A stretch of DNA of 64,000 nucleotides from the IMG/VR virus record IMGVR_UViG_3300047472_000309, positions 124,001 to 188,000 of that record, one strand, 5' to 3'. The stretch's first letter is position 1. Each line of letters starts with the position of its first letter. Of the stretch, positions 4,417 to 46,131 are shown one piece after another. The notes beneath the pieces are model-generated. The model worked only from the letters and a program-made list of their open reading frames with translations. It was not told the DNA's origin and made no database searches. Made by a program: the position numbers and the translations under genes.

Positions 4417-7026
4417 TTACTTCAAGTTCAACACGAGTTCGACCACTGCCTCCACCGAGCCTGCTTCCTTGACACGGATCACCAGTTTGTCGTGCTCGAC
4501 GTAGTGCACGTCGTAGATCTCGTCGTTCACGCCCTTGTGGTGATACATCTGGTCGATGTATTTCACCATGTTGCGAGCGCGCTCCTGCCTCTCCTCGTCA
4601 TCGAGGAGTTCGATGATCACGGCCATGGCGTGATTGAAGAAGACCCACACCGGCGTGGCGAAGCAGGTGCCCGGCAAATACGCGGTCGATGCCGTCACCG
4701 GCGGCGGGGGCGGTGCTTTCTTTGTTTCCGGTGAACCCAATACCCCCACTTGAATCACGTTCTCCTGCCACATGAGTGGATTAGAGGTTTCCATCACCGC
4801 AGTCGTCACTACCAGCATGACTTCCGAATCACTGCGGTCCGGATCGAAAACCCTGACGTGATAGGTGCCCGGAATCACTTGCGAGGCTTTCTTCGTCGTT
4901 GCGTCCATCACTGGACGCTGTTGCTTAACGATTTCGAAAAAGTGATAGGCCGTCACACCGGGATAAACGGAGGTGATCGAAACCGGACCTTCATTGAAGG
5001 CGAGCCAGCTCGTGAACTCCTCATACCCCACCACGTCATCCAACAGCGTCATGAAGCGCAAGGAAACCCCGGACTGCATCATGTTGACTGCAGGGGCTTC
5101 GCCGACTTTCGGACCTTCTTTCCAGTTCTGGCGCACGATCACTGGTTGCCGGATGGTTTCCGATTCGCCCATAGCACGAATACCCTTCATGCTCGTGGGC
5201 GTTTCGTACTTGCTAGTGTCCTTGAAGAGCATCGTCGGATCAGTCTTCGGGGCTCCCGTATCCGGAATCGGGTTCGCTGCCGAGCCCACATCCACGCTCT
5301 TACCGCCCATTGCTTGAGTACGTGCCGAAAGCGGTTCGAAGACCGGCGGCGGTCCCATCTTCGGCATCTCGACTTCGAACGCACCGATGCATTCCGAGAG
5401 TTTGCCTTGGTCAATCGATTCGAGTTCCGTGTACACATCGAAACCAAACAGCAGCTTCGAGTCTGCACCCGGCGAATAGACCTTGCCCTTGATGTGGCCG
5501 CGCTCCAGCGTGTGGTTACTGCGCAAGCTCGGCGAGATGACCCGTTCGAACTTGATCACCACTTGGCTGGCCAGACGACGATCCAGATCCCGGATGAGCG
5601 CGTAGCGCCGCTGGATGTCATTCCACAGCCGCTCGATGTCCTGGACTTCGCGCGCACTGGCCGTGTTCGTGAGCACCATCAGTGCACTAGCGCCGAAGCT
5701 CAGCGAGTCGACACGGTTGACCGCCAGATGTTGATTCTGACGCAGCGTCGGGTCCGTCAGGTACAGGATCTTTTCCACTTGCTGGGGCTTGCTGCCGATC
5801 CGATACTGAGTTTCCCATTCCGCCGTGGTCGTGAACGTGAGCATACTGCCGAGCTGCATCACGCCGAGCGGCTTACCCACAACTGGTACGAGCACAGCCA
5901 TGTCGACCAGACCCAACTCCGACGAGAGTTCATCCGAATGCGGGTTCTTCGTGCCAAGCAAGCTCGCACGCTTAACTGAGACGAAAGCGAACCGGATCAG
6001 GTCCGGCTCCACATCGTGCATTTTGCAGACCTTGTTGAGCAGCGTCTTGAAGTACTCGCAATCGCGCCGCTCCACCGACTGACCTTCCAGCCATTCTAGC
6101 GCGCACTCCAGGGTCGTCGGTCCGCCGCCCTCGAGCGGGACCAACACCGGCGCCGGTTCTTCTTTCTTTTGTTCCGGCCGAGCAGTCGCCTCGGCCGCCT
6201 TGGTGTCGTTTGCTGCTGCGTTGTTTTGTTCGAGTGCCATCTCTGCCTCCTGAGCAGGTTGTTCGGTGTGGGCTGCCGTATCGACAGGCGTGGGTGGCGT
6301 GTTCATCTCGTACAGCAGACGTGTTGCCTCGATGATGAACCCGTCAGCTTCCAGAATCTGACGCTGATCAAAGGTCAGAAAGCTGGTTTCAAAACGCAGG
6401 GTTGCCAGCACCATGTCCCTCGCGCCCTTAGGGCGCATATAGAGCTTGATCAGACCCCCGCGGCCTTCACGCGGATGACGCAGTGCATTACCTCGCACGA
6501 ATTCCACTTGCTGAGGCGTGAGGTTGTGCAACTTCAGGAAGTCCCGCAACTGCCTGAAGAGGACCTCACCCTGACTACCGTCGCCGCGATACACCGACAT
6601 CCACATGCGCAGATCGTCGATCGTCGCTGCGTTCTCTTTCGAGAACTCCGACAGGTCGATCCGCTTGATGTCGTAGTCCGTGCCGAACACGATGTATTCC
6701 TTGCCGTCGACCATCATTGTCCGCAACGCGTTGTGGTGCACGGTTTCAGCCGGGCGTCCAAGAGTGATCCATCTCAGTTCGATCATGAACATCCCGGCGA
6801 GCGCGGCTGCTTCTTGCGGCCGATAGCAATGATAGACTTGCCCCCAAAGTTCACCCGCTGGTGCCTTGCTATTGACGATACATTCCGCGACGTGATCCGC
6901 CACGACGCTCTTACGCAAATAGGTGTTCGACTTGATCCAGTCACCGAGTGTCTGTTCCTCGCCCGGATTCGCGACGATCGGAAAACTGGTTTGCCCTTGT
7001 TCGTGGGCTTGTTCGAGGGTAATCAT
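4417..7026 (-). CDS. large hypothetical protein
   Basis: 869 aa ORF, no recognisable motif. Confidence 0.8.
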   Translation of the reverse strand: MITLEQAHEQGQTSFPIVANPGEEQTLGDWIKSNTYLRKSVVADHVAECIVNSKAPAGELWGQVYHCYRPQEAAALAGMFMIELRWITLGRPAETVHHNALRTMMVDGKEYIVFGTDYDIKRIDLSEFSKENAATIDDLRMWMSVYRGDGSQGEVLFRQLRDFLKLHNLTPQQVEFVRGNALRHPREGRGGLIKLYMRPKGARDMVLATLRFETSFLTFDQRQILEADGFIIEATRLLYEMNTPPTPVDTAAHTEQPAQEAEMALEQNNAAANDTKAAEATARPEQKKEEPAPVLVPLEGGGPTTLECALEWLEGQSVERRDCEYFKTLLNKVCKMHDVEPDLIRFAFVSVKRASLLGTKNPHSDELSSELGLVDMAVLVPVVGKPLGVMQLGSMLTFTTTAEWETQYRIGSKPQQVEKILYLTDPTLRQNQHLAVNRVDSLSFGASALMVLTNTASAREVQDIERLWNDIQRRYALIRDLDRRLASQVVIKFERVISPSLRSNHTLERGHIKGKVYSPGADSKLLFGFDVYTELESIDQGKLSECIGAFEVEMPKMGPPPVFEPLSARTQAMGGKSVDVGSAANPIPDTGAPKTDPTMLFKDTSKYETPTSMKGIRAMGESETIRQPVIVRQNWKEGPKVGEAPAVNMMQSGVSLRFMTLLDDVVGYEEFTSWLAFNEGPVSITSVYPGVTAYHFFEIVKQQRPVMDATTKKASQVIPGTYHVRVFDPDRSDSEVMLVVTTAVMETSNPLMWQENVIQVGVLGSPETKKAPPPPPVTASTAYLPGTCFATPVWVFFNHAMAVIIELLDDEERQERARNMVKYIDQMYHHKGVNDEIYDVHYVEHDKLVIRVKEAGSVEAVVELVLNLK

Positions 7027-13809: not shown

Positions 13810-14372
13810 GAAGCGTCGATTGCAAAGTCCTGTGGACAGGGATAAGCAAAAGCTTTGACTCTATGCGACTCGAATGCACTTCCGACTATACTTACCAGAC
13901 AGGGTGGCCATCCCAGCAAGTAAGTACACCCGGCTGCGCATTCCCAGCCCGACGTAGACGCAGCGGCCGCGGTGAAAACCGCAGGCGCCACTAGGCGAAC
14001 AAGTCCCGTAACGGCCGCACAAGGAAGACGGGCGTAACAACTCCGGGCTGGCACGTCGGGTTACCCCGGTTACCAACGAATCGCGAAGAAGCGAGACTAG
14101 ACGCAGTATCGGTACTGGAAACAAACAACTTACTGGTGTTTGCGTCACCAGTCGTACGATTCGTGGCACCCTTCGCGCGCAAACGCGATCTCGTCCACAC
14201 GTAGGTACCTCCGCTAATCGTGAGTCACGGAGTCACAGGCGAAACTCGCCTGAATCTTGCTTGCAGCAAGTCTGGAAGCACTATCGACTCGGTCTGATCC
14301 ACAAGGTCCAGTCAGCGGCAGGTCAGTGCATGCAAAGGAGAGGGCGTAGTTTCACGTCCGACAATGCTTCCA
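13810..14372. ncRNA. candidate large structured ncRNA
   Basis: ~560 nt with no credible ORF and many nested inverted repeats, between the tRNA-like cluster and a terminator. Confidence 0.5.
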
Positions 14373-14394
14373 AATTTGATGGCAGAAGAAAACT

Positions 14395-14520
14395 TGGTTC
14401 CGTCAGGTTGGTATCGAACCAACGACCTCCGTCTGGTTGGTGAGTGGGAGAGTCCACCCTACCTGGTCGGTAGGTGGGCCCACTCTGATGACGGCGCTCT
14501 ACCAACTGAGCTACTGCGGA
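14395..14520 (-). ncRNA. tRNA-like RNA 1 (anticodon loop replaced by a long hairpin)
   Basis: TCCGCAG-TA-GCTCAGTTGGTAGAGC-G-CCGTC-[insert]-GACGG-AGGTC-GTTGGTTCGATACCAAC-CTGACGGA-A-CCA. Confidence 0.8.
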
Positions 14521-14544
14521 CACTGAGGTACAACGGTAAAAGGA

Positions 14545-14677
14545 TGGTTCCAAGCGACACGAATCGAACGTGTGACCTCCCGTCTGTGTATACCAACTCC
14601 ACCACTTCCCAATACTGGGAAGCCCGGATTCGAACCGGGGGAACTACGGGCACTCTTCCAAACTGAGCTACGCTGGA
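14545..14677 (-). ncRNA. tRNA-like RNA 2 (anticodon loop replaced by a circularly permuted tRNA module)
   Basis: TCCAGCG-TA-GCTCAGTTTGGAAGAGT-G-CCCGT-[T arm, closed acceptor hairpin, D arm]-ACGGG-AGGTC-ACACGTTCGATTCGTGT-CGCTTGGA-A-CCA. Confidence 0.8.
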
Positions 14678-14702
14678 CACTGATACAACTACAACGAATT
14701 CT

Positions 14703-14787
14703 TGGTAGAGAGGGTGCGATTTGAACGCACGAAGGCAGAGCCACCGGATTTACAGTCCGGCCCTTTTAACCACTCAGGCACCTCTCT
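14703..14787 (-). tRNA. tRNA-Tyr(GTA)
   Basis: AGAGAGG acceptor, D loop with GG, CCGGA-CTGTAAA-TCCGG anticodon arm, long variable arm, GTTCAAATC T loop, ACCA end. Confidence 0.95.
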
Positions 14788-14799
14788 ATTGCTGCATAT

Positions 14800-15531
14800 C
14801 TATACCACGTTCTGATAAGACTTGCCGTTGATGATGTCAGAGATCAACGAATGATGAGCGCCGTACTGACGACCAATCTCCCGCATTCCCATCGTCCCCT
14901 TCAACTGGCGAATCTCTCGAACCTGTTCTTCTGTGAACCGAGAACTACCCACTTCTGTCCCCTGCAGAATAGGAACCAAGTTATTAGCATAGGCGTGCTG
15001 GGTATTCTCTTTGTACGTCGCCCATTCAAGATTCGTGTCGCGATTGTCGATCTTCACCGCGTTCAGGTGATTAACGATTGGCTTGTTATCTGGGTTAGGG
15101 ACAAAAGCTTTTGCGACTTCACGACTCGTCTTGATTGCGCGATTCACTCCATTGCGACCACCGATCTTGGTGATGTGATGGAGATAGTTGCCATCTACTA
15201 AATTTTGCGACACAACGCGATTTGTCCGCTTCGAATACAAATCTCCGTTTCGAGTGACCAGGAAATAATCTTCCAGGCCCTCAATCGGTTTCGCGTCGTT
15301 ATGAGGACTTGGGTCATCGGCGGTTCGCTTACGAATCTCGCCGTCCTCAATAATTAGGTTGAGAGGGAAAGGCTCCCCATCTTCCATTTCCTGCTCAAAC
15401 TGGTCCAGCGGGCGAAGCTCGTGCGTGTTACCCGATTCTTTCAAATGGGTGATCAACATGAATTCTTTGCCGTTCTTGTCTTTTGTTTGTCGCAGAACCC
15501 ATTCGTCCAAATTAGGCATTACCAAAGGCAT
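14800..15531 (-). CDS. HNH homing endonuclease (NUMOD4-HNH-HTH type)
   Basis: IEGLEDYFLVTRNGDLYS (NUMOD4-like), VAKAFVPNPDNKPIVNHLNAVKIDNRDTNLEWATYKENTQHAY (HNH), C-terminal HTH. Confidence 0.9.
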   Translation of the reverse strand: MPLVMPNLDEWVLRQTKDKNGKEFMLITHLKESGNTHELRPLDQFEQEMEDGEPFPLNLIIEDGEIRKRTADDPSPHNDAKPIEGLEDYFLVTRNGDLYSKRTNRVVSQNLVDGNYLHHITKIGGRNGVNRAIKTSREVAKAFVPNPDNKPIVNHLNAVKIDNRDTNLEWATYKENTQHAYANNLVPILQGTEVGSSRFTEEQVREIRQLKGTMGMREIGRQYGAHHSLISDIINGKSYQNVV

Positions 15532-15662
15532 GCTTTATCCTTCAAAAAGTGGGAACTACTAGAGAGGGCGTTGAGGACACGCACGACGTTCACACAAGCT
15601 TCTGGTTAGGAAGCTCATGCAAGCATCACCCTCTCTAATAGATGCTCAGACGCGGTAAAAAG

Positions 15663-35981: not shown

Positions 35982-36060
35982 TCTTTTTCGGTAAGTAAAA
36001 AAATATTGGATCGTATGAAGTGTATTTTTTTCGCTTCGATCACTACCGAAAGGGGTTAGC

Positions 36061-36852
36061 ATGAGCAACAGTAAGTACAAGCGTAAACGCAAGACGCATG
36101 ATGCGCGCGACTTCGTTTACCACGGTCACAAGACCTTCGGGGCGGCCCTGATTCCGCCCAAAGCGGACTTGACGCCTTACCTCGGCCCGGTCTTCGATCA
36201 AGATCAGCTCGGTAGCTGCACCGCCAACGCCTGCGCAGGCGCACTTGAATACGAACAGAACATCCAGAACAACAATCACAACGCCGTGCCACTCTCGCGG
36301 CTATTCCTGTACTGGAATGAGCGTAATCTGGAAGGCACGGTCGATCAGGATTCGGGTGGTCAGATTCGTGATGTGGTGAAAGCCGCAGCCCAGTACGGCG
36401 CGCCGCTCGAAACCACCTGGCCGTACAATGAACGGGCGTTTCGTCAGAAGCCTTCGCTCGAAGCATATACTGAAGGGCTGCAACATCGGGCACTGAAGTA
36501 CGAAGCCGTGCCGCAGGACATGACGGCCTTCAAGCACGTGCTGGCGGTGCTCAATCGTCCGATTCTGATCGGCATCATGGTGTTCGATTCGTTCGAGTCG
36601 CAAGAAACGATCGCCTCCGGGGTCGTTCCGATGCCGGGTGCGAATGAAACCTGCCAGGGCGGTCACGCCGTGCTGTGCGTGGGTTACGACGATCAGAAGC
36701 AAGCATTTCTCGTGCGGAACTCCTGGAACGAAATCTATCCTCCGGCTTGGCCGGGTTCGAAGGAGCGAGGCTCGTTCTGGTTGCCCTACGAGTACATGAT
36801 GAATCCGGAACTCGCTGAAGACTTCTGGGTGATCACAAGCGTGAACGGCTAA
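36061..36852 (+). CDS. papain-family (C1A) cysteine protease
   Basis: DQDQLGSCTANA (Gln/Cys), GGHAVLCVGYDD (His), VRNSW (Asn). Confidence 0.92.
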   Translation: MSNSKYKRKRKTHDARDFVYHGHKTFGAALIPPKADLTPYLGPVFDQDQLGSCTANACAGALEYEQNIQNNNHNAVPLSRLFLYWNERNLEGTVDQDSGGQIRDVVKAAAQYGAPLETTWPYNERAFRQKPSLEAYTEGLQHRALKYEAVPQDMTAFKHVLAVLNRPILIGIMVFDSFESQETIASGVVPMPGANETCQGGHAVLCVGYDDQKQAFLVRNSWNEIYPPAWPGSKERGSFWLPYEYMMNPELAEDFWVITSVNG

Positions 36853-36877
36853 GCAAAAAAAGAAGGACAGCATAGAC

Positions 36878-36900: not shown

Positions 36901-36920
36901 TTATGTCGCTTGAGCCTTGA

Positions 36921-37286
36921 TTACGCAGCGAAGAGTTCCACCGCTTCGTACCTCGCCGTGGGTGTGTCCTCGATCAGCTTCGACATGATTGCGTCCTTGA
37001 ACTCGACCGGCAGCAGCGTTGCGTTGTGCTGGCTATTGGCCCAGCTAAACGACGTCGGCTTTTCCTCATCCGCGAAGTAAACCTGGCTGAGATACTGATA
37101 CTTCTTCTCACCCCGTTCATCATACGCACGACGAATCACCCAGCCGAAGCTCTTGGAGTCCACTGTCTTTTCAAGGATCTCCGCTGCGTGTCGTACCCCA
37201 TTATCGTACGCGCGCATGGTGTCCAAGTGAGCGGGCTTCTGCGGAACTTCCTTGAGGATAAGAGCCACCAGGGGATGCTTATTCAT
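36921..37286 (-). CDS. hypothetical protein co-transcribed after the Tas gene
   Basis: 121 aa, GAGGAG RBS, starts 22 bp after the Tas stop codon. Confidence 0.7.
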   Translation of the reverse strand: MNKHPLVALILKEVPQKPAHLDTMRAYDNGVRHAAEILEKTVDSKSFGWVIRRAYDERGEKKYQYLSQVYFADEEKPTSFSWANSQHNATLLPVEFKDAIMSKLIEDTPTARYEAVELFAA

Positions 37287-37308
37287 TTACCACTCCTCTT
37301 TTAAACAG

Positions 37309-38574
37309 TTATGCCGTGTAGCGTGGATGCTGCCAACCGGCTTCTTTCGCTTGACCGTGGACCTTACCCAGCACGCCTTCCGAATACTCCGGTGCGACCA
37401 CCAGACCTTCCAGCGCACGCCACTTGTTGTACAGATCAACCAAGAAGCGCTTGACCATGTAGCGGATGGCCATGTTGTGTTTGTGCAGGTCCGTCTTCTC
37501 GGCGTGGCGCGGATCGTTCTTCAGGCGGTTCTTGTAATTGTTGTAGATGACCGCATACGGGCTCGGCTCAACCACCACCGTGTGACCCTTGGCGCGCAGG
37601 TAGATGATGACGGCCTGATCTTCGTCCATCTCTGCGTAGTCCTTCGGATCAAAGCCTTCTTCCTTAGCGAGCTCCAGCCGACGCAGTGCACCGACTTTCT
37701 TGCCATCCACCGTGGAGATGCCCGCACGCAAGAACGAGGTCCCTGCCACGCCGATCAGCTTGGTCTTCAGGAACGGGTTGAAGGTAATCGAATCACGCAG
37801 GGCGAGTTCACCTTCGCGGTTGGTGTATTCCTTCTGCACCAAACAGAAGTCACGCCGTGAACGACCGACCGCTTCGAAGGTCACCGGATACTTGCCTTCA
37901 GCGAGCATCGGCTGATCGAAGTTCTTGCTGTCGGCGTACCAGGCGTCGATTTCCTGACCCCGCACCGTCTGCTCACGACCCTTATCGTCGATGTACTTGC
38001 CGATGTGCACTACGTCCAGGCCTGCGAGCTTCCAGAGGCTTGACGGATATTCCGCCTTGGTGATGTCGATCTCAGAGACGATGATGCCTGCCAAGGCCGG
38101 ACCAATCCCGCGCACGCTCGACAAGAACTCGGTATAGATCGGGATCTTCTTCAGAATCCGTTCCATGTCCTTGAAGTGGTGCTCTTCGTTCTTGAGCGTG
38201 TTCAGGTAGTTATCCACCAGCAACAGTTCGCTGTAGTGCGTGATGAGCTCATCGCCCTTGAACTTCTTCTCCGTGGGGAGCTTAGCTGTCACGGTTTCAG
38301 CGGCTTCAGCCGTGTCGTCGTGGTGCTCGTCGATGATACCATCGGTGATGCGGCGATAGGACTTGCGCAGCTGCTCGAGCAGGTTCTTTTCCTGCTTCTC
38401 GAGTTCCGCCTCGCTCATGCCGTCCTGACGCAGACCGAGCTTGGCTTTGAAGCTCGCAGTCACGCGGTTACCCATCTGGATTCGCAGCCCTTGCATGTCA
38501 TAGGCCGAGCGCACCATGGTGCGAATCACTGCGAGGTTGGGGTTGTAGGTCGGAGCGATGATCGGGGTATTCAT
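37309..38574 (-). CDS. tasA: TIGR-associated Nop-domain protein (TasA-like; IS110/Nop5-related, no nuclease domain)
   Basis: starts at the IS110-type coiled coil (IRTMVRSAYDMQGLRIQMGNR); VRGIGPALAGIIVSEIDI..EYPSSLWKLAGL, FNPFLKTKL, Y..YK.R, H.HNMAIRYMVKRFLVDLY..WR.LEGL; no N-terminal RuvC/DEDD or HNH; abuts the dual-repeat array. Confidence 0.85.
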   Translation of the reverse strand: MNTPIIAPTYNPNLAVIRTMVRSAYDMQGLRIQMGNRVTASFKAKLGLRQDGMSEAELEKQEKNLLEQLRKSYRRITDGIIDEHHDDTAEAAETVTAKLPTEKKFKGDELITHYSELLLVDNYLNTLKNEEHHFKDMERILKKIPIYTEFLSSVRGIGPALAGIIVSEIDITKAEYPSSLWKLAGLDVVHIGKYIDDKGREQTVRGQEIDAWYADSKNFDQPMLAEGKYPVTFEAVGRSRRDFCLVQKEYTNREGELALRDSITFNPFLKTKLIGVAGTSFLRAGISTVDGKKVGALRRLELAKEEGFDPKDYAEMDEDQAVIIYLRAKGHTVVVEPSPYAVIYNNYKNRLKNDPRHAEKTDLHKHNMAIRYMVKRFLVDLYNKWRALEGLVVAPEYSEGVLGKVHGQAKEAGWQHPRYTA

Positions 38575-38620
38575 GATTCGGTTTCCTTGTTTCAATTGTA
38601 AGTGGTTGTATACGCGTTAA

Positions 38621-40071
38621 TGTTACACTAGCTGCTCTTGGGTGAGACTCTACTGGTTTGATACACTAAGACAATCTGGATGAATCGTTGAGGTTGATAC
38701 ACTGTGCGAATATGGATGAATAAAGGTCGCTGATACACTACTCTACGCTGGGTGATTTCTGTATTGTGATACACACAGACCTGATGGATGAATAACCGTC
38801 CTTGATACACTAACCAACATTGGGTGGCTTTTGCGCCATGATCCACTATTTTCAACTGGGTGAATTGAATACGTTGATGCATTTTCCACGTTGGGTGGTT
38901 TAACTTCGCTGATACACAGTCCTTCGTTGGAGGACTCCAGGATAAAGATACACTAACCGGAATTGGGGGACTGTTTGACCGTGATACGTTACTGCACGTT
39001 GGGTGACTGCAAACATGTGACGCACTGCGAATTGATGGGTGGTTCAAGACTTTTGATACGTTGAGGGATACTGGAGGCCTAATGCACGATGACTCAATCA
39101 TCCTACTGGGCGACTTGATCGATGTGCTACACATACCTCGCATGGATGAATCCAATGTCTCGGTACGCTGATATTCATCGAGTGAAGGCGTCTTTCATGG
39201 CACACTTCATGCTTTGGGTGTCTCTTGCCTCTGATCCATTCTATCACAATGGGTGGCTGGAGCAGATTGATACACTCGAGATCGTGGGTGACATTCGTCC
39301 TACCTTGATACATTAACTCATGACGGATGCATAGACGTCTTTGATACACTTACGATGCATGGGTAATTAGCGTGCTTTGATGCACTAACTCTTTTTGAGT
39401 GCGCTTCCCGAAGTGGTACACTAAAAATTTTTGGGTGTCTGCGTATTTTTGATGCGGTTGATTGCGTGGGTAACTTCCATGTTTTGGCCCGTATTACTCA
39501 TTTGGGCGACAACACCTTTTGACGCACTTCTCCTCCATGGGCGAAATTAAACCGGTGGTACGATTTCGACTCTCTGGGGGACTATGTCAGTCTGACACAC
39601 TAGACTACAATGGGGGACTTTTACTCATTGATGCAATTATCCGGTTTGGGCGAATAACAAAAACATGGTACATTCATCTCTCCTGGGTGCTTCAACATGC
39701 CTGATGCGCAAGTGTAGTATGGGTGGCTTCATCTTCTCTGACGCACTGTTCGACAATGGGTCACTTAGTTACTGTGATACACATTTCCCCTATGGGTGCG
39801 ATACCGATGTGATACATTTATTGCAATTGGGTGACTGGTCCGGATTGATACGCTGACTACGCCTGGATGAATTAGCGCTCGTTGGCACACTGGCATAGGG
39901 TGGGTGAATCTTGAGTTTTCTGATGCGCTTGGCGCAACTGGATGCCAATGATACTGTGCCACACTTCGACAACTGGGTGACTTAACTTCCTTGGTCAACT
40001 ATGCGGGACTGGGTGACATCGATACTCTGATACACTAAATCAGTTGGGTGACTGGTGGTTCTTGATGCGTA
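38621..40071 (-). repeat. TIGR array (tandem interspaced guide RNA array), ~40 units of ~36 bp
   Basis: alternating 9-mers TGATACACT and TGG(G/A)TGA(A/C)T separated by unique 8-12 nt (mostly 9 nt) spacers; unit starts at 38659, 38695, 38731, 38767, 38803, 38839, 38875 ... 40028, 40063; strand assigned by inference. Confidence 0.9.
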
Positions 40072-40076
40072 CTACG

Positions 40077-40105
40077 GCCCGAGGTTTGCCTCGGGCTTTA
40101 TGCCG
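40077..40105 (+). terminator. hairpin + TTTATGCCG at the distal end of the array
   Basis: GCCCGAGG-TTTG-CCTCGGGC-TTTATGCCG. Confidence 0.6.
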
Positions 40106-40113
40106 CACAGGTG

Positions 40114-40413
40114 TTAATGCACTGTATCATTACCGCGGTGCAACACCGTCAGGTTCTCCTTCACCTGCTCGACCCTGATCGTCGTCTTCGCGATGATATC
40201 GTCGACATAGGCAAGCACTTCAGTAGCCTCGTCGATCAGGACCAGATCGTTATCCGCCATGCGCTGACCTGCTTCGCAGAACGGTTTCACGCGCCCGGTG
40301 ATCTTGCCGATGCACTGGCTCAGCTCTTCAAACGTCGCGAACGAATTCGGTGGGTTATTGACAAACGCCACAAGTTCTTCACGTTCTTCGGGGGTGAGTT
40401 CAAAACGTTCCAT
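40114..40413 (-). CDS. hypothetical protein
   Basis: 99 aa, AGGAG RBS. Confidence 0.65.
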   Translation of the reverse strand: MERFELTPEEREELVAFVNNPPNSFATFEELSQCIGKITGRVKPFCEAGQRMADNDLVLIDEATEVLAYVDDIIAKTTIRVEQVKENLTVLHRGNDTVH

Positions 40414-40435
40414 CGTCTACTCCTGGTGATGTTCT

Positions 40436-40801
40436 TTACTGCGTGACTTCCACGACCTCGCCCGGAATCACACGAATCGAATCCGGCTCGTAGACATCCT
40501 TGTAACCTTGCGGGTACTTCCGGCCGATCTCGCTGTCGTCGTTACGCGGGTCCCAGTGCACCACGTACGGGCAGCGATTGCCGTCGTAAAAGCCGCTCAC
40601 CATAGCACCCATCATGGCGCTTTGCAACGCCGCATCCTGAATGGTCGCAATGGCTTGCGCCGCTGCGCGCGGATTTTCCTTCGCGTAGCTATTGGGCGTG
40701 ATGTTGTTGTAGCCGACGATGGTGCCTTTACCATGCGAGTGCGGACCACCGTCGAAGTGCGTGACGCGTTGGCCGATCGGCAGCAGCTGTATTGGTTGCA
40801 T
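40436..40801 (-). CDS. hypothetical protein (SH3-like)
   Basis: PIGQRVTH...GKGTIVGY...YVVHWD pattern. Confidence 0.65.
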   Translation of the reverse strand: MQPIQLLPIGQRVTHFDGGPHSHGKGTIVGYNNITPNSYAKENPRAAAQAIATIQDAALQSAMMGAMVSGFYDGNRCPYVVHWDPRNDDSEIGRKYPQGYKDVYEPDSIRVIPGEVVEVTQ

Positions 40802-41176: not shown

Positions 41177-41677
41177 TCAATTGCTCGCAAGGAGCATTGG
41201 AATATGCGGGGGTGGAAGAGATGCTACGCGCACAGTTTGCTGCTTAGCTGCAAGAATCGTCTTGACGGCTTGACGAACCTTGGTGGCGTACACTGCGCGC
41301 TCTTTAGGCGTGTTCGAGTGATAGCCGCCGACGGCAGCCCAAGTATTGCCGTACCGGTTCATCGAGCGACGCAGCAACCAGGCTGCGACGTATATGTTCT
41401 TGCAGCTCTGCATCAAGTCCCGACGGCCGATCTTGTACCTCTTCAGTTCCGGGAGATGGATCGAATTCACTTGCATGATGCCAAAGTCAATCGAACCATT
41501 CTTGTTGCGATTAATGGCCTTGGGGTCCATTTGGCTTTCTACCGTGGCGATCCCTTTTAGGATCGTCGGATTCACGCGCTGGTAAGCCGCAGCATCCGTA
41601 AAGCAGTCAGCCTGTGTAACCCCGGAAAACAGCATAGTTGCAGCGGCGAGGGTGGTGAGGAGTGTTCTTCTAACCAT
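41177..41677 (-). CDS. soluble lytic transglycosylase (SLT, IagB-like)
   Basis: signal peptide, DCF..AA, IATVES (catalytic Glu), D.GIMQVNS, AVGGYHS. Confidence 0.9.
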   Translation of the reverse strand: MVRRTLLTTLAAATMLFSGVTQADCFTDAAAYQRVNPTILKGIATVESQMDPKAINRNKNGSIDFGIMQVNSIHLPELKRYKIGRRDLMQSCKNIYVAAWLLRRSMNRYGNTWAAVGGYHSNTPKERAVYATKVRQAVKTILAAKQQTVRVASLPPPHIPMLLASN

Positions 41678-42148: not shown

Positions 42149-42499
42149 TTAGCGTAACTGCGGCGGGACTGCGTTGGTGACAATCGTGCCGTGATGCATG
42201 AGGTAGTCCGACGGGACAGGCCAGTGATGCAATTGGTAGACCACGTCCCGGCATCCAAAACAAAAGACTTTGTGCCTATGGATGTCGTACCAACCCGTGC
42301 GTGCACCGCACTTAGGACAATTAGGGTTCGCACCCCAAGTCTTACGAGGCGGGGGAGGAGGTTGCTTCTCCCAAACCTTCACCCACTCGCCTTTCTTCTT
42401 GACATAGATCTTGTTGACCGGAACCTTTTGCCAAGTACTGCGCCGCAGGCTAAAGAGCCGCTTAAATAGCCACGTAAGCATGCGCACCGTCAACCTCAA
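42149..42499 (-). CDS. Zn-ribbon protein
   Basis: CPKC...CFGC. Confidence 0.55.
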   Translation of the reverse strand: MRLTVRMLTWLFKRLFSLRRSTWQKVPVNKIYVKKKGEWVKVWEKQPPPPPRKTWGANPNCPKCGARTGWYDIHRHKVFCFGCRDVVYQLHHWPVPSDYLMHHGTIVTNAVPPQLR

Positions 42500-42911
42500 C
42501 GCGAAACCACAGCTCGAGCATGGCAGACAATCTGGCCAATACGTCCAGCGAAATCGGGTCGTCCAGATTCCTGAACTTGGTCATCGGGTACTGGAGAGGC
42601 CGAAGTCGTCTTGCCACCTCGGCGGGCTTGATACCCTTCTTCACCATGGCGTTCCAGATCAACACCTTCGCCTCGACGTTCAGACTGAGCGTCATGGCCA
42701 TTTCGTCGGCTTGCGGGTTTGAGGGCATCGGGATCGGCTTGCCTTGCTCCATCAGCAGCTCCGCGATCACCTTGAACGCCTCGTAACCCATCTTCACCGC
42801 GTACTCTCGGGTCGAGCCGCGCGGCGCGCCAGTGGTCAATTGCGGAATATCGCGCGATTGGACTAGCCAGCCCGGATCGTCGACCGTTACCTTAAGCGGA
42901 TAAATCAGCAT
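42462..42911 (-). CDS. hicB: HicB-like antitoxin (orphan)
   Basis: YP....DD.GWLV...DIP...T.....E.A.....EA...G.PIP.PS, then AKVL.WN.M...GI..AE.ARRL HTH. Confidence 0.8.
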   Translation of the reverse strand: MLIYPLKVTVDDPGWLVQSRDIPQLTTGAPRGSTREYAVKMGYEAFKVIAELLMEQGKPIPMPSNPQADEMAMTLSLNVEAKVLIWNAMVKKGIKPAEVARRLRPLQYPMTKFRNLDDPISLDVLARLSAMLELWFRVEVDGAHAYVAI

Positions 42912-45258: not shown

Positions 45259-46131
45259 TTAGACTCTCGCTGTCGTAATGCCCATCTGGCCTTGATACTT
45301 GCCTGCGCGCTTGGCATAGTCGACTTCACAGTGGTCGCCCTGCAAGAACATGAACTGCGCGATGCCCATGTCCGCGTAGACTTTCATGGGCAACGGCGTT
45401 TGATTGGCGATCTCGATGACCACCTGACCCTTGAAGCCGGGTTCGATCGGTGTCACGTTAATCGCACAACCTGCGCGCGCGTACGTCGACTTGCCGACGC
45501 AGATGGCCACCACGTCGGTCGGCATGTTGAAGTACTCGATCGTGTGGCCCAGCACGTAGCTATTGGGCGGAATGACCACGTAGTCGCCTTCGTGATCGAC
45601 ATAAGCCTTCTCCGGCATATTCAGCGGATCGATGACTTCCGAGAACACGTTGGTGAAGATCTTGAACTTGCGACCGAGCCGAACATCGTAGCCCATGCTC
45701 GATGTGCCGTACGAGATGATCTTCTGGCCGGGATTCGTTGCAATGGCGCCGTCCTTAGTACCGAAGCGCCAGATTTGCTTGTCATCATCCCAGTATTTGT
45801 CGGCAGTGCGAACCTGCCCCGGCACGAAGGGTGTGATCATGCGCCCCCATTGGCCGTCCGGTTGACCGACCACCAAACCCTGATCCGGGTCCGGAACGAA
45901 ACAAGCGCCGCCTGCGAAGCCGACGGCCTGCTCGATCGTGAGTTCCTTCAGGTGCCGCATGGCTTCTTCCAACCCGCCCTTCCAGCGCGTGTCGTCCCGA
46001 TACCCGTCCCCGAGGCAATAGAGCTCATCACCGACCAGTGCGTAAAGCGTCCGGCGCAGGTTGTTATCGACGCGCTGATGCGTGGGCATCAGCGAGAGCT
46101 TTCTGATGGCGCGGTCATTCAAAATGGTCAT
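45259..46131 (-). CDS. dcd: dCTP deaminase with N-terminal insertion
   Basis: [44 protein letters not shown]. Confidence 0.93.

What the first reader, a model, noticed from the sequence alone, without database searches (positions are those of the whole stretch)
37309..40071. TIGR-Tas-type RNA-guided system: ~40-unit dual-repeat guide array plus Nop-domain gene in a jumbo phage
Seen: a 1.45 kb stretch, visibly AT-richer than the flanking genes, with ~36-bp periodicity. Two conserved 9-mers alternate (plus strand TGATACACT and TGG(G/A)TGA(A/C)T; minus strand AGTGTATCA and A(G/T)TCA(C/T)CCA), separated by unique, mostly 9-nt spacers, e.g. 38659 TGATACACT-aagacaatc-TGGATGAAT-cgttgaggt-38695 TGATACACT-gtgcgaata-TGGATGAAT-aaaggtcgc. 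It starts ~45 bp upstream of a 421-aa gene carrying the IS110/Nop5 RNA-binding fold. Known: this is the TIGR-Tas architecture (36-nt tigRNAs with edge and loop repeats and two 9-nt spacers that read opposite DNA strands). Inference: the phage encodes about 40 programmable guides. CRISPR finders would miss the array and annotators would call the gene an IS110 transposase.
Basis: partly seen in the sequence, partly recalled or inferred. Interest (0 to 1): 0.95.

Follow-up and report, generated by a model that had tools for sequence, protein, structure and literature searches.

The report
TIGR guide-RNA array with nuclease-free Tas gene
A 310-kb phage genome carries a known kind of RNA-guided DNA-targeting system (TIGR-Tas): about 40 tiny two-part guides sit next to a guide-binding protein that has no DNA-cutting domain, so it is a further example of a system described in 2025 rather than a new kind.

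Summary

**Array.** Window 38621-40071 holds 41 edge repeats (AGTGTATCA) alternating with 40 loop repeats (AGTCACCCA / ATTCATCCA), read on the minus strand. That gives 40 units. 24 units are exactly 36 nt; the other 16 have spacers of 8 or 10-12 nt.

**Gene.** The array lies 47 bp upstream of a 421-aa gene (37309-38574, minus strand) and is co-oriented with it.

**Protein.**
- Its predicted fold matches only solved TasH and TasR structures with confidence.
- It just passes NCBI's TIGR-Tas model and fails the IS110 model.
- It starts directly at the coiled coil, so it is TasA-type with no nuclease domain.
- It keeps an invariant Tyr/His pair in the C-terminal loop.
- It carries about 115 residues in three insertions that compact 283-aa relatives lack.

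**Relatives.** 27 of 30 related viral loci carry a 36-bp array beside the gene. So does the cultured Ralstonia phage phiRSL1.

**Evolution.** Shared spacers change about 5 times more slowly than synonymous sites of tas. Whole units turn over, mostly at the tas-proximal end.

**Context.** The module is an accessory cassette absent from the closest cultured phage, Burkholderia phage FLC9.

**Open question.** No target was found.

**Verdict:** new member of a known kind, moderate interest.

The parts
37309..38574 (-). tas gene, 421 aa, TasA-type (Nop domain plus coiled coil, no nuclease domain). It has three clade-specific insertions at about residues 80-97, 193-236 and 285-336. Tyr397 and His406 sit in the C-terminal loop.
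   Evidence: Translation. NCBIfam NF052498 scores 100.1 bits against a cut-off of 100. A profile of homologs hits TasR 9mty_A at E 6e-17, aligned from TasR residue 123 onward, and TasH at E 7.5e-9. The AF2 model has pLDDT 88. The top 10 PDB fold hits are all TasH or TasR. Insertions were defined against 283-aa relatives. Y397 and H406 are invariant in 57 homologs.
38584..38588 (-). ribosome-binding site AAGGA, 9 nt before the ATG
   Evidence: Read from the sequence. The leader is conserved in L002 and L003.
38621..40071 (-). [quoted passage not shown] Edge consensus is AGTGTATCA. Loop consensus is AGTCACCCA, with an ATTCATCCA variant. The first edge (40063-40071) is degenerate at its 5' side. 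The last edge (38621-38629) is degenerate at its 3' side.
   Evidence: Strand and edge/loop assignment come from comparison with the SpTasH array and 25 related arrays.
38603..38611 (-). loop-like 9-mer ATACAACCA after the last edge repeat, conserved in close relatives. It may be a vestigial repeat inside the tas leader.
   Evidence: the same 9-mer plus 'cttacaat' occurs in L002 and L003.
40077..40096 (.). G+C-rich hairpin (8-bp stem, 4-nt loop) between the stop codon of the upstream ORF and the first repeat. It has no U-tract on the array strand and only TTTAT on the + strand. Its role is unresolved.
   Evidence: Sequence. It is conserved in L001-L003 with a loop substitution. Hairpins also sit between the tas stop and the first repeat in phiRSL1 and SpTIGR; in the window it follows a different upstream ORF.
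40114..40413 (-). 99-aa ORF of unknown function directly upstream of the array. It lies inside the 3.5-kb stretch that has no counterpart in phage FLC9.
36921..37286 (-). 121-aa ORF of unknown function 22 nt downstream of tas. It is found only in this phage among the fetched loci, so it is probably not part of the system.

Best explanation
This is a dual-repeat TIGR-Tas system of the TasA (nuclease-free) type, carried as an accessory cassette by an FLC9-like jumbo phage.

**Shown:**
- A 40-unit array of alternating edge and loop repeats with 9-nt spacers lies on the same strand as a Nop-domain Tas gene, just upstream of it.
- The gene is under strong purifying selection.
- Spacers shared with close relatives are also conserved.

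**Inferred from published work on TasA, TasH and TasR:**
- The minus strand is transcribed through the array, probably on into tas.
- A Tas dimer binds the precursor.
- The conserved Tyr397/His406 loop cuts inside each edge repeat and releases about 36-nt tigRNAs. Each would run from the 3' half of an edge repeat through spacer A, the loop repeat and spacer B to the 5' half of the next edge repeat.
- Each ribonucleoprotein binds an 18-bp DNA site that reads spacer A followed by the reverse complement of spacer B. The two spacers pair with opposite strands.
- With no nuclease domain, the likely outcome is DNA binding that blocks transcription or replication of the target, in the host or in a competing mobile element.

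The targets are not known.
For: **Protein**
- Sequence and profile hits to solved TasR and TasH.
- The fold search returns only TasH and TasR entries with probability 1.00. Nop5, Prp31 and IS110 follow far behind.
- The NCBIfam TIGR-Tas model is passed.
- The alignment to TasR starts after its RuvC domain, and the model begins with the coiled coil at residue 12.
- Y397 aligns with the catalytic Y289 of SpTasH. Y397 and H406 are invariant in 57 homologs (PMC13421893).

**Array**
-.

**Orientation**
- The experimentally processed SpTasH array reads AAGCGAGCCA / AAGACAACCA on the gene strand and ends with a truncated edge repeat plus a terminator.
- All 25 related arrays read A(G)...CCA on the gene strand, whether upstream or downstream of tas.
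- L011 has a terminator after its array on that strand.
- L005 has a terminator plus an AT-rich stretch before its array.

**Linkage**
- 27 of 30 related loci carry a 36-bp array next to the gene, as does phiRSL1.

**Selection**
- tas codon positions 1+2 diverge 0.012-0.024 per site, against 0.26-0.38 at four-fold sites.
- Retained spacers diverge 0.05-0.06 per site; the repeats in the same units diverge 0.10-0.11.

**Published function**
- TasA and dead TasR act as RNA-guided repressors (bioRxiv 10.64898/2026.09.09.750476).
Against: - No RNA data exist for this locus, so transcription, processing and strand are inferred.
- No target was found. There is nothing within 2 mismatches in the 64-kb window.
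- Three guides gave no exact hit in the viral contig collection, which includes this phage's own 310-kb contig.
- One guide gave four scattered hits in the genome collection, in unrelated taxa, with no clustering.
- phiRSL1's guides do not match its own complete genome.
- 16 of 40 units depart from 36 nt, whereas published dual-repeat guides are described as uniform.
- His406 lies two residues after the position that aligns with the catalytic His296 of SpTasH.
- The function of the roughly 115 inserted residues is unknown, so an added activity or partner cannot be excluded.
- No promoter was identified. The hairpin at 40077-40096 looks more like a terminator on the opposite strand.
Confidence: 0.88

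Rival explanations
1. The Tas protein works with another effector. The clade-specific insertions (residues about 193-236 and 285-336) form a docking or catalytic module, so the system cuts or modifies its targets rather than merely binding them.
For: Three insertions totalling about 115 residues are absent from the compact 283-aa relatives. They fold with high confidence into strands and helices. They match nothing in Pfam or PDB by sequence. Published surveys describe dual-repeat Tas proteins as having a compact core (bioRxiv 10.64898/2026.09.09.750476, section 6).
Against: The inserted segments contain no invariant acidic or histidine residues; the invariant ones are A303, G307 and L326. No neighbouring gene is linked to tas across relatives. 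Neighbours have no recognisable domains.
Confidence: 0.12
2. The guides act on RNA, as box C/D guide RNAs do, rather than on DNA.
For: The Nop fold is shared with Nop5, Nop56/58 and Prp31 (probability 0.4-0.75). Both repeats share box C/D-like ends.
Against: TasR showed no activity on RNA substrates (PMC12045711, section 7). TasA binds DNA in vitro and represses genes in vivo (bioRxiv 10.64898/2026.09.09.750476). None of the window ORFs scanned against Pfam or PHROGs matched fibrillarin or L7Ae. This protein also lacks the Nop5 N-terminal domain.
Confidence: 0.04
3. The array is a decaying relic and no longer makes functional guides.
For: 16 of 40 units have off-size spacers and many repeats are degenerate. 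No targets were found.
Against: Tas is under strong purifying selection. Retained spacers are more conserved than the repeats and far more than synonymous sites. New units keep appearing in close relatives. 24 units are canonical.
Confidence: 0.04
4. It is an IS110-family insertion sequence with a guide RNA, a CRISPR array, or a gene for a 12-residue repeat protein.
For: There is a weak Pfam Transposase_20 hit (E 0.013, below cut-off). PHROG 4285 and phiRSL1 ORF034 are annotated 'transposase'. A 175-aa ORF lies inside the array.
Against: The IS110 NCBIfam model scores 21.7 bits against a cut-off of 140, and there is no DEDD/RuvC domain. Two different 9-nt repeats alternate, unlike CRISPR. The internal ORF covers one third of the array and is not conserved in L002, L003 or L005. 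Stop-free stretches are within what shuffled sequence gives, and unit lengths break the frame.
Confidence: 0.01

Closest known systems
TIGR-TasA, dual-repeat type (Faure et al. 2025, Science; e.g. Flavonifractor plautii FpTasA)
   Same: A solo Nop-domain protein with a coiled coil. An adjacent array of alternating edge and loop repeats with 9-nt spacers and a 36-nt unit. A single-gene module with no adaptation genes. Phage-borne.
   Different: About 115 extra residues in three insertions. 40 units, against a mean of about 16 per dual-repeat array (65,635 guides in 4,126 arrays). 40% of units are off-size. The array lies upstream of the gene with no terminator between them.
SpTasH of Salicola phage CGphi29 (solved structures 9w03, 9w04, 21kl)
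   Same: Best fold match. The repeats have the same shape on the gene strand: edge AGCGAGCCA and loop AGACAACCA there, AGTGTATCA and AGTCACCCA here. A Tyr in the C-terminal loop aligns with the catalytic Y289.
   Different: SpTasH has an N-terminal HNH nuclease and cuts DNA, and its spacers are 8 nt. Here there is no nuclease domain, spacers are 9 nt, and the conserved His lies two residues further along. Identity is only 28% over 94 residues.
TaTasR (PDB 9mty)
   Same: Nop domain and coiled coil; profile E 6e-17. 9-nt spacers and a 36-nt unit.
   Different: TaTasR has an N-terminal RuvC nuclease. Its repeats begin with UG and end with CCA, whereas here they begin with AG.
ORF034 plus the unannotated gap of Ralstonia phage phiRSL1 (NC_010811, 13180-15643)
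   Same: A homologous Tas (28% identity) beside an array of about 36 units with edge AGTGAGCC(T) and loop AGTCACCCA. Also a jumbo phage.
   Different: The array lies downstream of the gene. The protein is 345 aa and lacks most of the insertions. It is annotated as a transposase, and the array is not annotated.
IS110 bridge-RNA recombinases and archaeal/eukaryotic box C/D RNPs (Nop5, Nop56/58)
   Same: A distantly related Nop RNA-binding fold (ISCro4 probability 0.60, Nop5 0.54-0.75).
   Different: This protein has no DEDD/RuvC domain, no serine recombinase-type domain, no fibrillarin-binding domain and no K-turn guides. The IS110 model fails.

Membership tests
TIGR-Tas | Tas protein with a Nop domain related to characterised TasA/TasR/TasH | tested here: met
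   phmmer gives 9mty_A E 4.6e-9 and TasH E 2.9e-5. The profile gives E 6e-17 and 7.5e-9. The Foldseek top 10 are all TasH or TasR with probability 1.00. NCBIfam NF052498 scores 100.1 bits against a cut-off of 100.
TIGR-Tas | Array of two distinct alternating 8-12-nt repeats separated by about 9-nt spacers, with a unit of about 36 nt | tested here: met
   41 edge and 40 loop 9-mers. 62 of 80 spacers are 9 nt. 24 of 40 units are exactly 36 nt. The lag-36 autocorrelation has z 13.5.
TIGR-Tas | Edge and loop repeats share box D-like 5' ends and box C-like 3' ends (pseudo-symmetry for a protein dimer) | tested here: met
   Both repeats start with A(G) and end with C-A; C8 is invariant and A9 is present in 39/41 and 38/40 copies. 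SpTasH's processed array and 25 relatives show the same pattern. Box D here is AG, not the UG of TasR arrays.
TIGR-Tas | Array next to tas, with the pairing conserved in relatives | tested here: met
   27 of 30 viral loci with a homolog have a 36-bp periodic array beside the gene. Orientation relative to the gene is constant. phiRSL1 has the same arrangement.
TIGR-Tas | [quoted passage not shown] | tested here: inconclusive
   The first edge is TACGCATCA and the last is AGTGTAACA, each degenerate on the expected side. No terminator follows, because tas comes next. The hairpin at 40077-40096 precedes the array instead.
TIGR-Tas (dual-repeat clade) | C-terminal loop with a conserved Tyr/His pair that processes the precursor | tested here: met
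   Y397 and H406 are invariant in 57 homologs. Y397 aligns with SpTasH Y289. H406 lies two residues after the column of H296. Catalysis itself was not tested.
TIGR-Tas | Array transcribed and processed into about 36-nt tigRNAs bound by Tas | not testable with these tools
   This needs small-RNA sequencing of an expression strain or of infected cells.
TIGR-Tas | Tandem-spacer recognition of an 18-bp DNA target on opposite strands | not testable with these tools
   No natural target was found. Binding assays are needed.
TasA subtype | No N-terminal HNH or RuvC nuclease domain | tested here: met
   The alignment to TasR starts at TasR residue 123, after its RuvC domain. The model is helical coiled coil from residue 12. 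No nuclease family appears in Pfam.
IS110 family RNA-guided transposase | DEDD/RuvC-like N-terminal domain plus C-terminal Tnp domain; passes the family model | tested here: not met
   NF033542 scores 21.7 bits against a cut-off of 140. Pfam Transposase_20 scores 16.3 bits against 21.3. There is no DEDD domain.
CRISPR array | One repeat of 25-36 nt alternating with spacers of similar size; cas genes nearby | tested here: not met
   Two different 9-nt repeats alternate with 9-nt spacers. No Cas family was found in the neighbours.

The most novel reading that the evidence does not exclude
The arrays of this jumbo-phage clade hold two classes of guides. The first is a core set kept under purifying selection, which implies fixed targets, most plausibly in the Burkholderiaceae-type host or a recurrent competitor. 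The second is a fast-changing set that is gained and lost as whole units, mainly at the tas-proximal end. That would be the first sign of polarised acquisition in TIGR arrays, for which no adaptation mechanism is known. The clade-specific insertions in Tas might take part in that process or recruit a partner.
Probability: 0.2. Interest if true: 0.8.

Novelty: new member of a known kind. Interest (0 to 1): 0.45.

Why it matters
TIGR-Tas systems are well characterised biochemically, but their natural role, their targets and the way arrays gain spacers are all open questions, as the 2025 and 2026 papers state. This locus adds four things.

1. **A long array in a jumbo-phage lineage.** The lineage has a syntenic cultured relative, Burkholderia phage FLC9, which lacks the cassette. 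That gives a natural with/without comparison.
2. **A cultured phage that carries a related system.** phiRSL1's array is unannotated in GenBank and its gene is labelled 'transposase'. It offers a native phage-host pair in which the biology could be tested.
3. **Comparative evidence.** Retained spacers are under selection, while units turn over at one end of the array.
4. **A structural exception.** This dual-repeat TasA clade has large insertions, against the published generalisation of a compact core.

None of this changes what kind of system it is.

Tried and rejected
- **Tandem Repeats Finder** found nothing in the array.
- **Promoter and terminator scans.** The generic scan gave no usable signal. 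My own terminator scan across 21 loci found only sparse and conflicting sites. Strand was therefore settled by comparison with the SpTasH array instead.
- **Megablast** of the locus against GenBank phages found no match.
- **Rfam** found no family. **PADLOC** found none.
- **Supplements** of the 2025 paper, as held, do not mention this contig or phiRSL1.
- **Self-target search in the window.** None within 2 mismatches; 3-mismatch hits equalled the controls.
- **Exact 18-mers.** Guides 22, 28 and 38 in the geometry implied by 3' overhangs gave 0 hits in viral contigs. Guide 22 gave 4 scattered hits in the genome collection, in Paenibacillus and three archaeal MAGs, with no taxonomic clustering.
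- **phiRSL1 self-targeting.** Its 18 regular guides against its own 231-kb genome gave one hit at 2 mismatches, with controls similar. Self-regulation through near-perfect sites is therefore not supported there.
- **Repeat quality along the array.** There is no significant gradient in this window (rho 0.07).
- **Polarity of turnover in the compact-Tas clade.** The picture is a mosaic; one pair suggests the tas-proximal end is again the variable one, but this is too little to conclude.
- **The insertion region alone** has no Pfam or PDB sequence match. Weak WWE-domain fold hits (E about 1.4) are not trustworthy.
- **FLC9 genome.** I did not fetch the rest of it to test the window's guides against it.
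Full report
- The stretch 38600-40100 has autocorrelation peaks at lag 36 (z 13.5 against shuffles), 18 (z 6.3), 72 and 108. Its GC is 0.46 against 0.55 for the window.
In the array they alternate every 18 bp on one strand.
- A chain parse gives 41 copies of one repeat and 40 of the other between 38621 and 40071, that is 40 units.
- 62 of 80 spacers are 9 nt. 24 of 40 units are exactly 36 nt. The rest are 34, 35, 37 or 38 nt.
- No other such array exists in the window.
- Tandem Repeats Finder missed it and Rfam has nothing there.
- The region is not a repeat-protein gene. The 175-aa ORF at 38628-39155 covers a third of the array and is absent from close relatives. Stop-free runs are within what shuffled sequence gives.

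**2. The gene.**
- The minus-strand ORF 37309-38574 (421 aa; ATG preceded by AAGGA) starts 47 bp after the last repeat.
- Pfam gives only a sub-threshold IS110-type hit. PHROGs calls the family 'transposase'.
- NCBIfam's model 'TIGR-Tas system RNA-guided endonuclease' is matched at 100.1 bits against a cut-off of 100. The IS110 model scores 21.7 bits against 140.
- Against solved structures, the protein and a 57-sequence profile hit TaTasR (9mty, E 6e-17) and SpTasH (E 7.5e-9) and nothing else of note.
- An AlphaFold model (pLDDT 88, pTM 0.83) matches ten TasH or TasR chains with probability 1.00. Nop5, Nop56/58, Prp31 and an IS110-family recombinase follow as weak matches.
- The alignment to TasR begins at its residue 123, after the RuvC domain, and the model is coiled coil from residue 12. 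The protein is therefore TasA-type, with no nuclease domain.
- Tyr397 aligns with the catalytic Tyr289 of SpTasH. His406 lies two residues beyond the column of His296. Both are invariant in 57 homologs (PMC13421893). This fits the self-processing loop reported for dual-repeat systems (bioRxiv 10.64898/2026.09.09.750476).
- Compared with 283-aa relatives, the protein has three insertions at about residues 80-97, 193-236 and 285-336. They match nothing by sequence.

**3. Strand and anatomy of the array.**
- The experimentally characterised SpTasH locus (NC_020844) has its array just after the gene and on the same strand. Its edge repeat is AAGCGAGCCA and its loop repeat AAGACAACCA. It ends with a truncated edge repeat and a clear terminator.
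- In 25 arrays next to homologs of the window's protein, the repeats read A(G/A)YG..YCA and AG..A.CCA on the gene strand, whether the array is upstream or downstream.
- One downstream array is followed by a terminator on that strand. One upstream array is preceded by a terminator and an AT-rich stretch.
- I therefore read the window's array on the minus strand. The edge repeat is AGTGTATCA and the loop repeat AGTCACCCA, with an ATTCATCCA variant.
- The first edge is degenerate at its 5' side and the last at its 3' side, as described for TIGR arrays (PMC12045711).
- The conserved positions are A1, G4, C8 and A9 in the edge, and A1, C4, C7, C8 and A9 in the loop. Both repeats thus share AG-type 5' ends and CA 3' ends.
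- A conserved G+C hairpin (40077-40096) sits between the upstream ORF and the first repeat. It lacks a U-tract on the array strand, and its role is unresolved.

**4. Relatives and context.**
- The window is part of IMGVR_UViG_3300047472_000309, a contig of 310,654 bp.
- The protein family is large: 1,975 clusters at 50% identity with E of 1e-3 or better. The full-length, insertion-bearing form occurs on many contigs of 200-285 kb.
- 27 of 30 viral loci with a homolog have a 36-bp array beside it.
- The cultured jumbo phage phiRSL1 has a homolog annotated 'transposase' (ORF034). It is followed by an unannotated 1.4-kb gap that holds an array of about 36 units.
- The window's other genes are syntenic with Burkholderia phage FLC9 (322 kb). 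The exception is a 3.5-kb stretch with the upstream ORF, the array, tas and one private ORF; FLC9 has unrelated small genes there. The system is an accessory cassette.
- No neighbouring gene travels with tas. No ParB, Cas or nuclease family was found nearby.

**5. Evolution of the array.**
- Three phages with 98% identical Tas have arrays of 41, 46 and 36 units. The arrays are collinear but differ by whole units, with 13 and 9 units identical to the window's.
- Units found in only one phage are concentrated in the ten units nearest tas (Fisher p 0.03, 0.07 and 0.006).
- In homologous units, anchored on one spacer, the other spacer differs at 0.05-0.06 per site. The repeats differ at 0.10-0.11, and four-fold sites of tas at 0.26-0.38. 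Retained spacers are therefore under purifying selection.
- A phage with 79% identical Tas shares no unit.
- The sample is three arrays, so the polarity is a lead and not a result.

**6. Targets.**
- The 3' overhangs reported for TasR (PMC12045711, section 7) imply a target strand that reads spacer A followed by the reverse complement of spacer B.
- In that geometry I found no site within 2 mismatches in the window.
- Three guides gave no exact site in the viral collection, which includes the phage's own contig.
- One guide gave only scattered hits, in unrelated taxa, in the genome collection.
- phiRSL1's guides do not match its own complete genome.
- The literature reports the same difficulty.

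**7. Mechanism.**
- Shown: the anatomy, the homology and the selection.
- Inferred from published work: minus-strand transcription; Tas-dependent cutting within the edge repeats into about 36-nt guides; a Tas dimer that binds an 18-bp site through both spacers; and, lacking a nuclease, repression or blockage of the target rather than cleavage.
- The main rival is that the insertions add an activity or a partner.

**8. Verdict.** This is a TIGR-TasA locus, a new member of a known kind. Secondary points of interest are the long, partly irregular array, the enlarged dual-repeat TasA, the jumbo-phage cassette, selection on spacers with turnover at one end, and an overlooked system in a cultured phage. 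No paper in the searched library links TIGR-Tas with jumbo phages, phiRSL1 or FLC9.

Noticed in passing
L031 4975-6400 (= NC_010811.2 about 14217-15643): Ralstonia phage phiRSL1 has an unannotated 1.4-kb gap after ORF034 ('transposase'). The gap is a TIGR array of about 36 units (edge AGTGAGCC(T), loop AGTCACCCA). Only 18 of the units have 9+9 spacers. Its guides do not match its own genome.
   Followed up: yes
window 38621-39000 against L002 and L003 5540-5972: Units private to one phage cluster in the ten units nearest tas in all three close relatives. The very last unit is shared. This may mean that units are gained or exchanged near the tas-proximal end.
   Followed up: partly
window 38621-40071; L002, L003: In homologous units the spacers are about twice as conserved as the repeats, and about five times as conserved as synonymous sites of tas. 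Some homologous units differ by one or two spacer bases between phages, for example gcgaccttt/tattcgcac against gcaaccttt/tattcccac.
   Followed up: partly
window 40077-40096; L031 about 4988-5007; L032 15331-15350: A G+C-rich hairpin without a U-tract on the array strand sits just before the first repeat in this phage, in phiRSL1 and in the Salicola phage locus. It may be a processing or stability element, or a terminator for antisense transcripts.
   Followed up: partly
window 36909-40445 against L037 4797-7274: The tas cassette replaces five unrelated small genes (gp164-gp168) of Burkholderia phage FLC9 in an otherwise syntenic region. This looks like a hot spot for accessory genes.
   Followed up: partly
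window 36061-36852 (+): This plus-strand 263-aa ORF is the real gene here: it is 81% identical in translation over 294 codons to the region of FLC9 gp163, which has the same length. The overlapping minus-strand ORFs 36301-36873 and 36056-36493 are probably spurious.
   Followed up: partly
window 14703-14787 and 14800-15531: A tRNA-Tyr gene lies directly next to an HNH endonuclease ORF (PHROG 59).
   Followed up: no
window 42462-42911 (-), 45259-46131 (-), 41177-41677 (-): A HicB-like antitoxin-family ORF, a dCTP deaminase-like ORF and an SLT-domain transglycosylase lie close to the cassette.
   Followed up: no
proteins P0121, P0138, P0176, P0181, P0186, P0198: Some relatives are 670-880 aa, with the Tas part at one end. 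These are fusions to unknown extra domains.
   Followed up: no
L007 2521-4501: The locus with a 48%-identical, 446-aa Tas shows periodicities of 42 and 33 bp upstream, not 36 bp. It may be a variant array with a different unit length.
   Followed up: no
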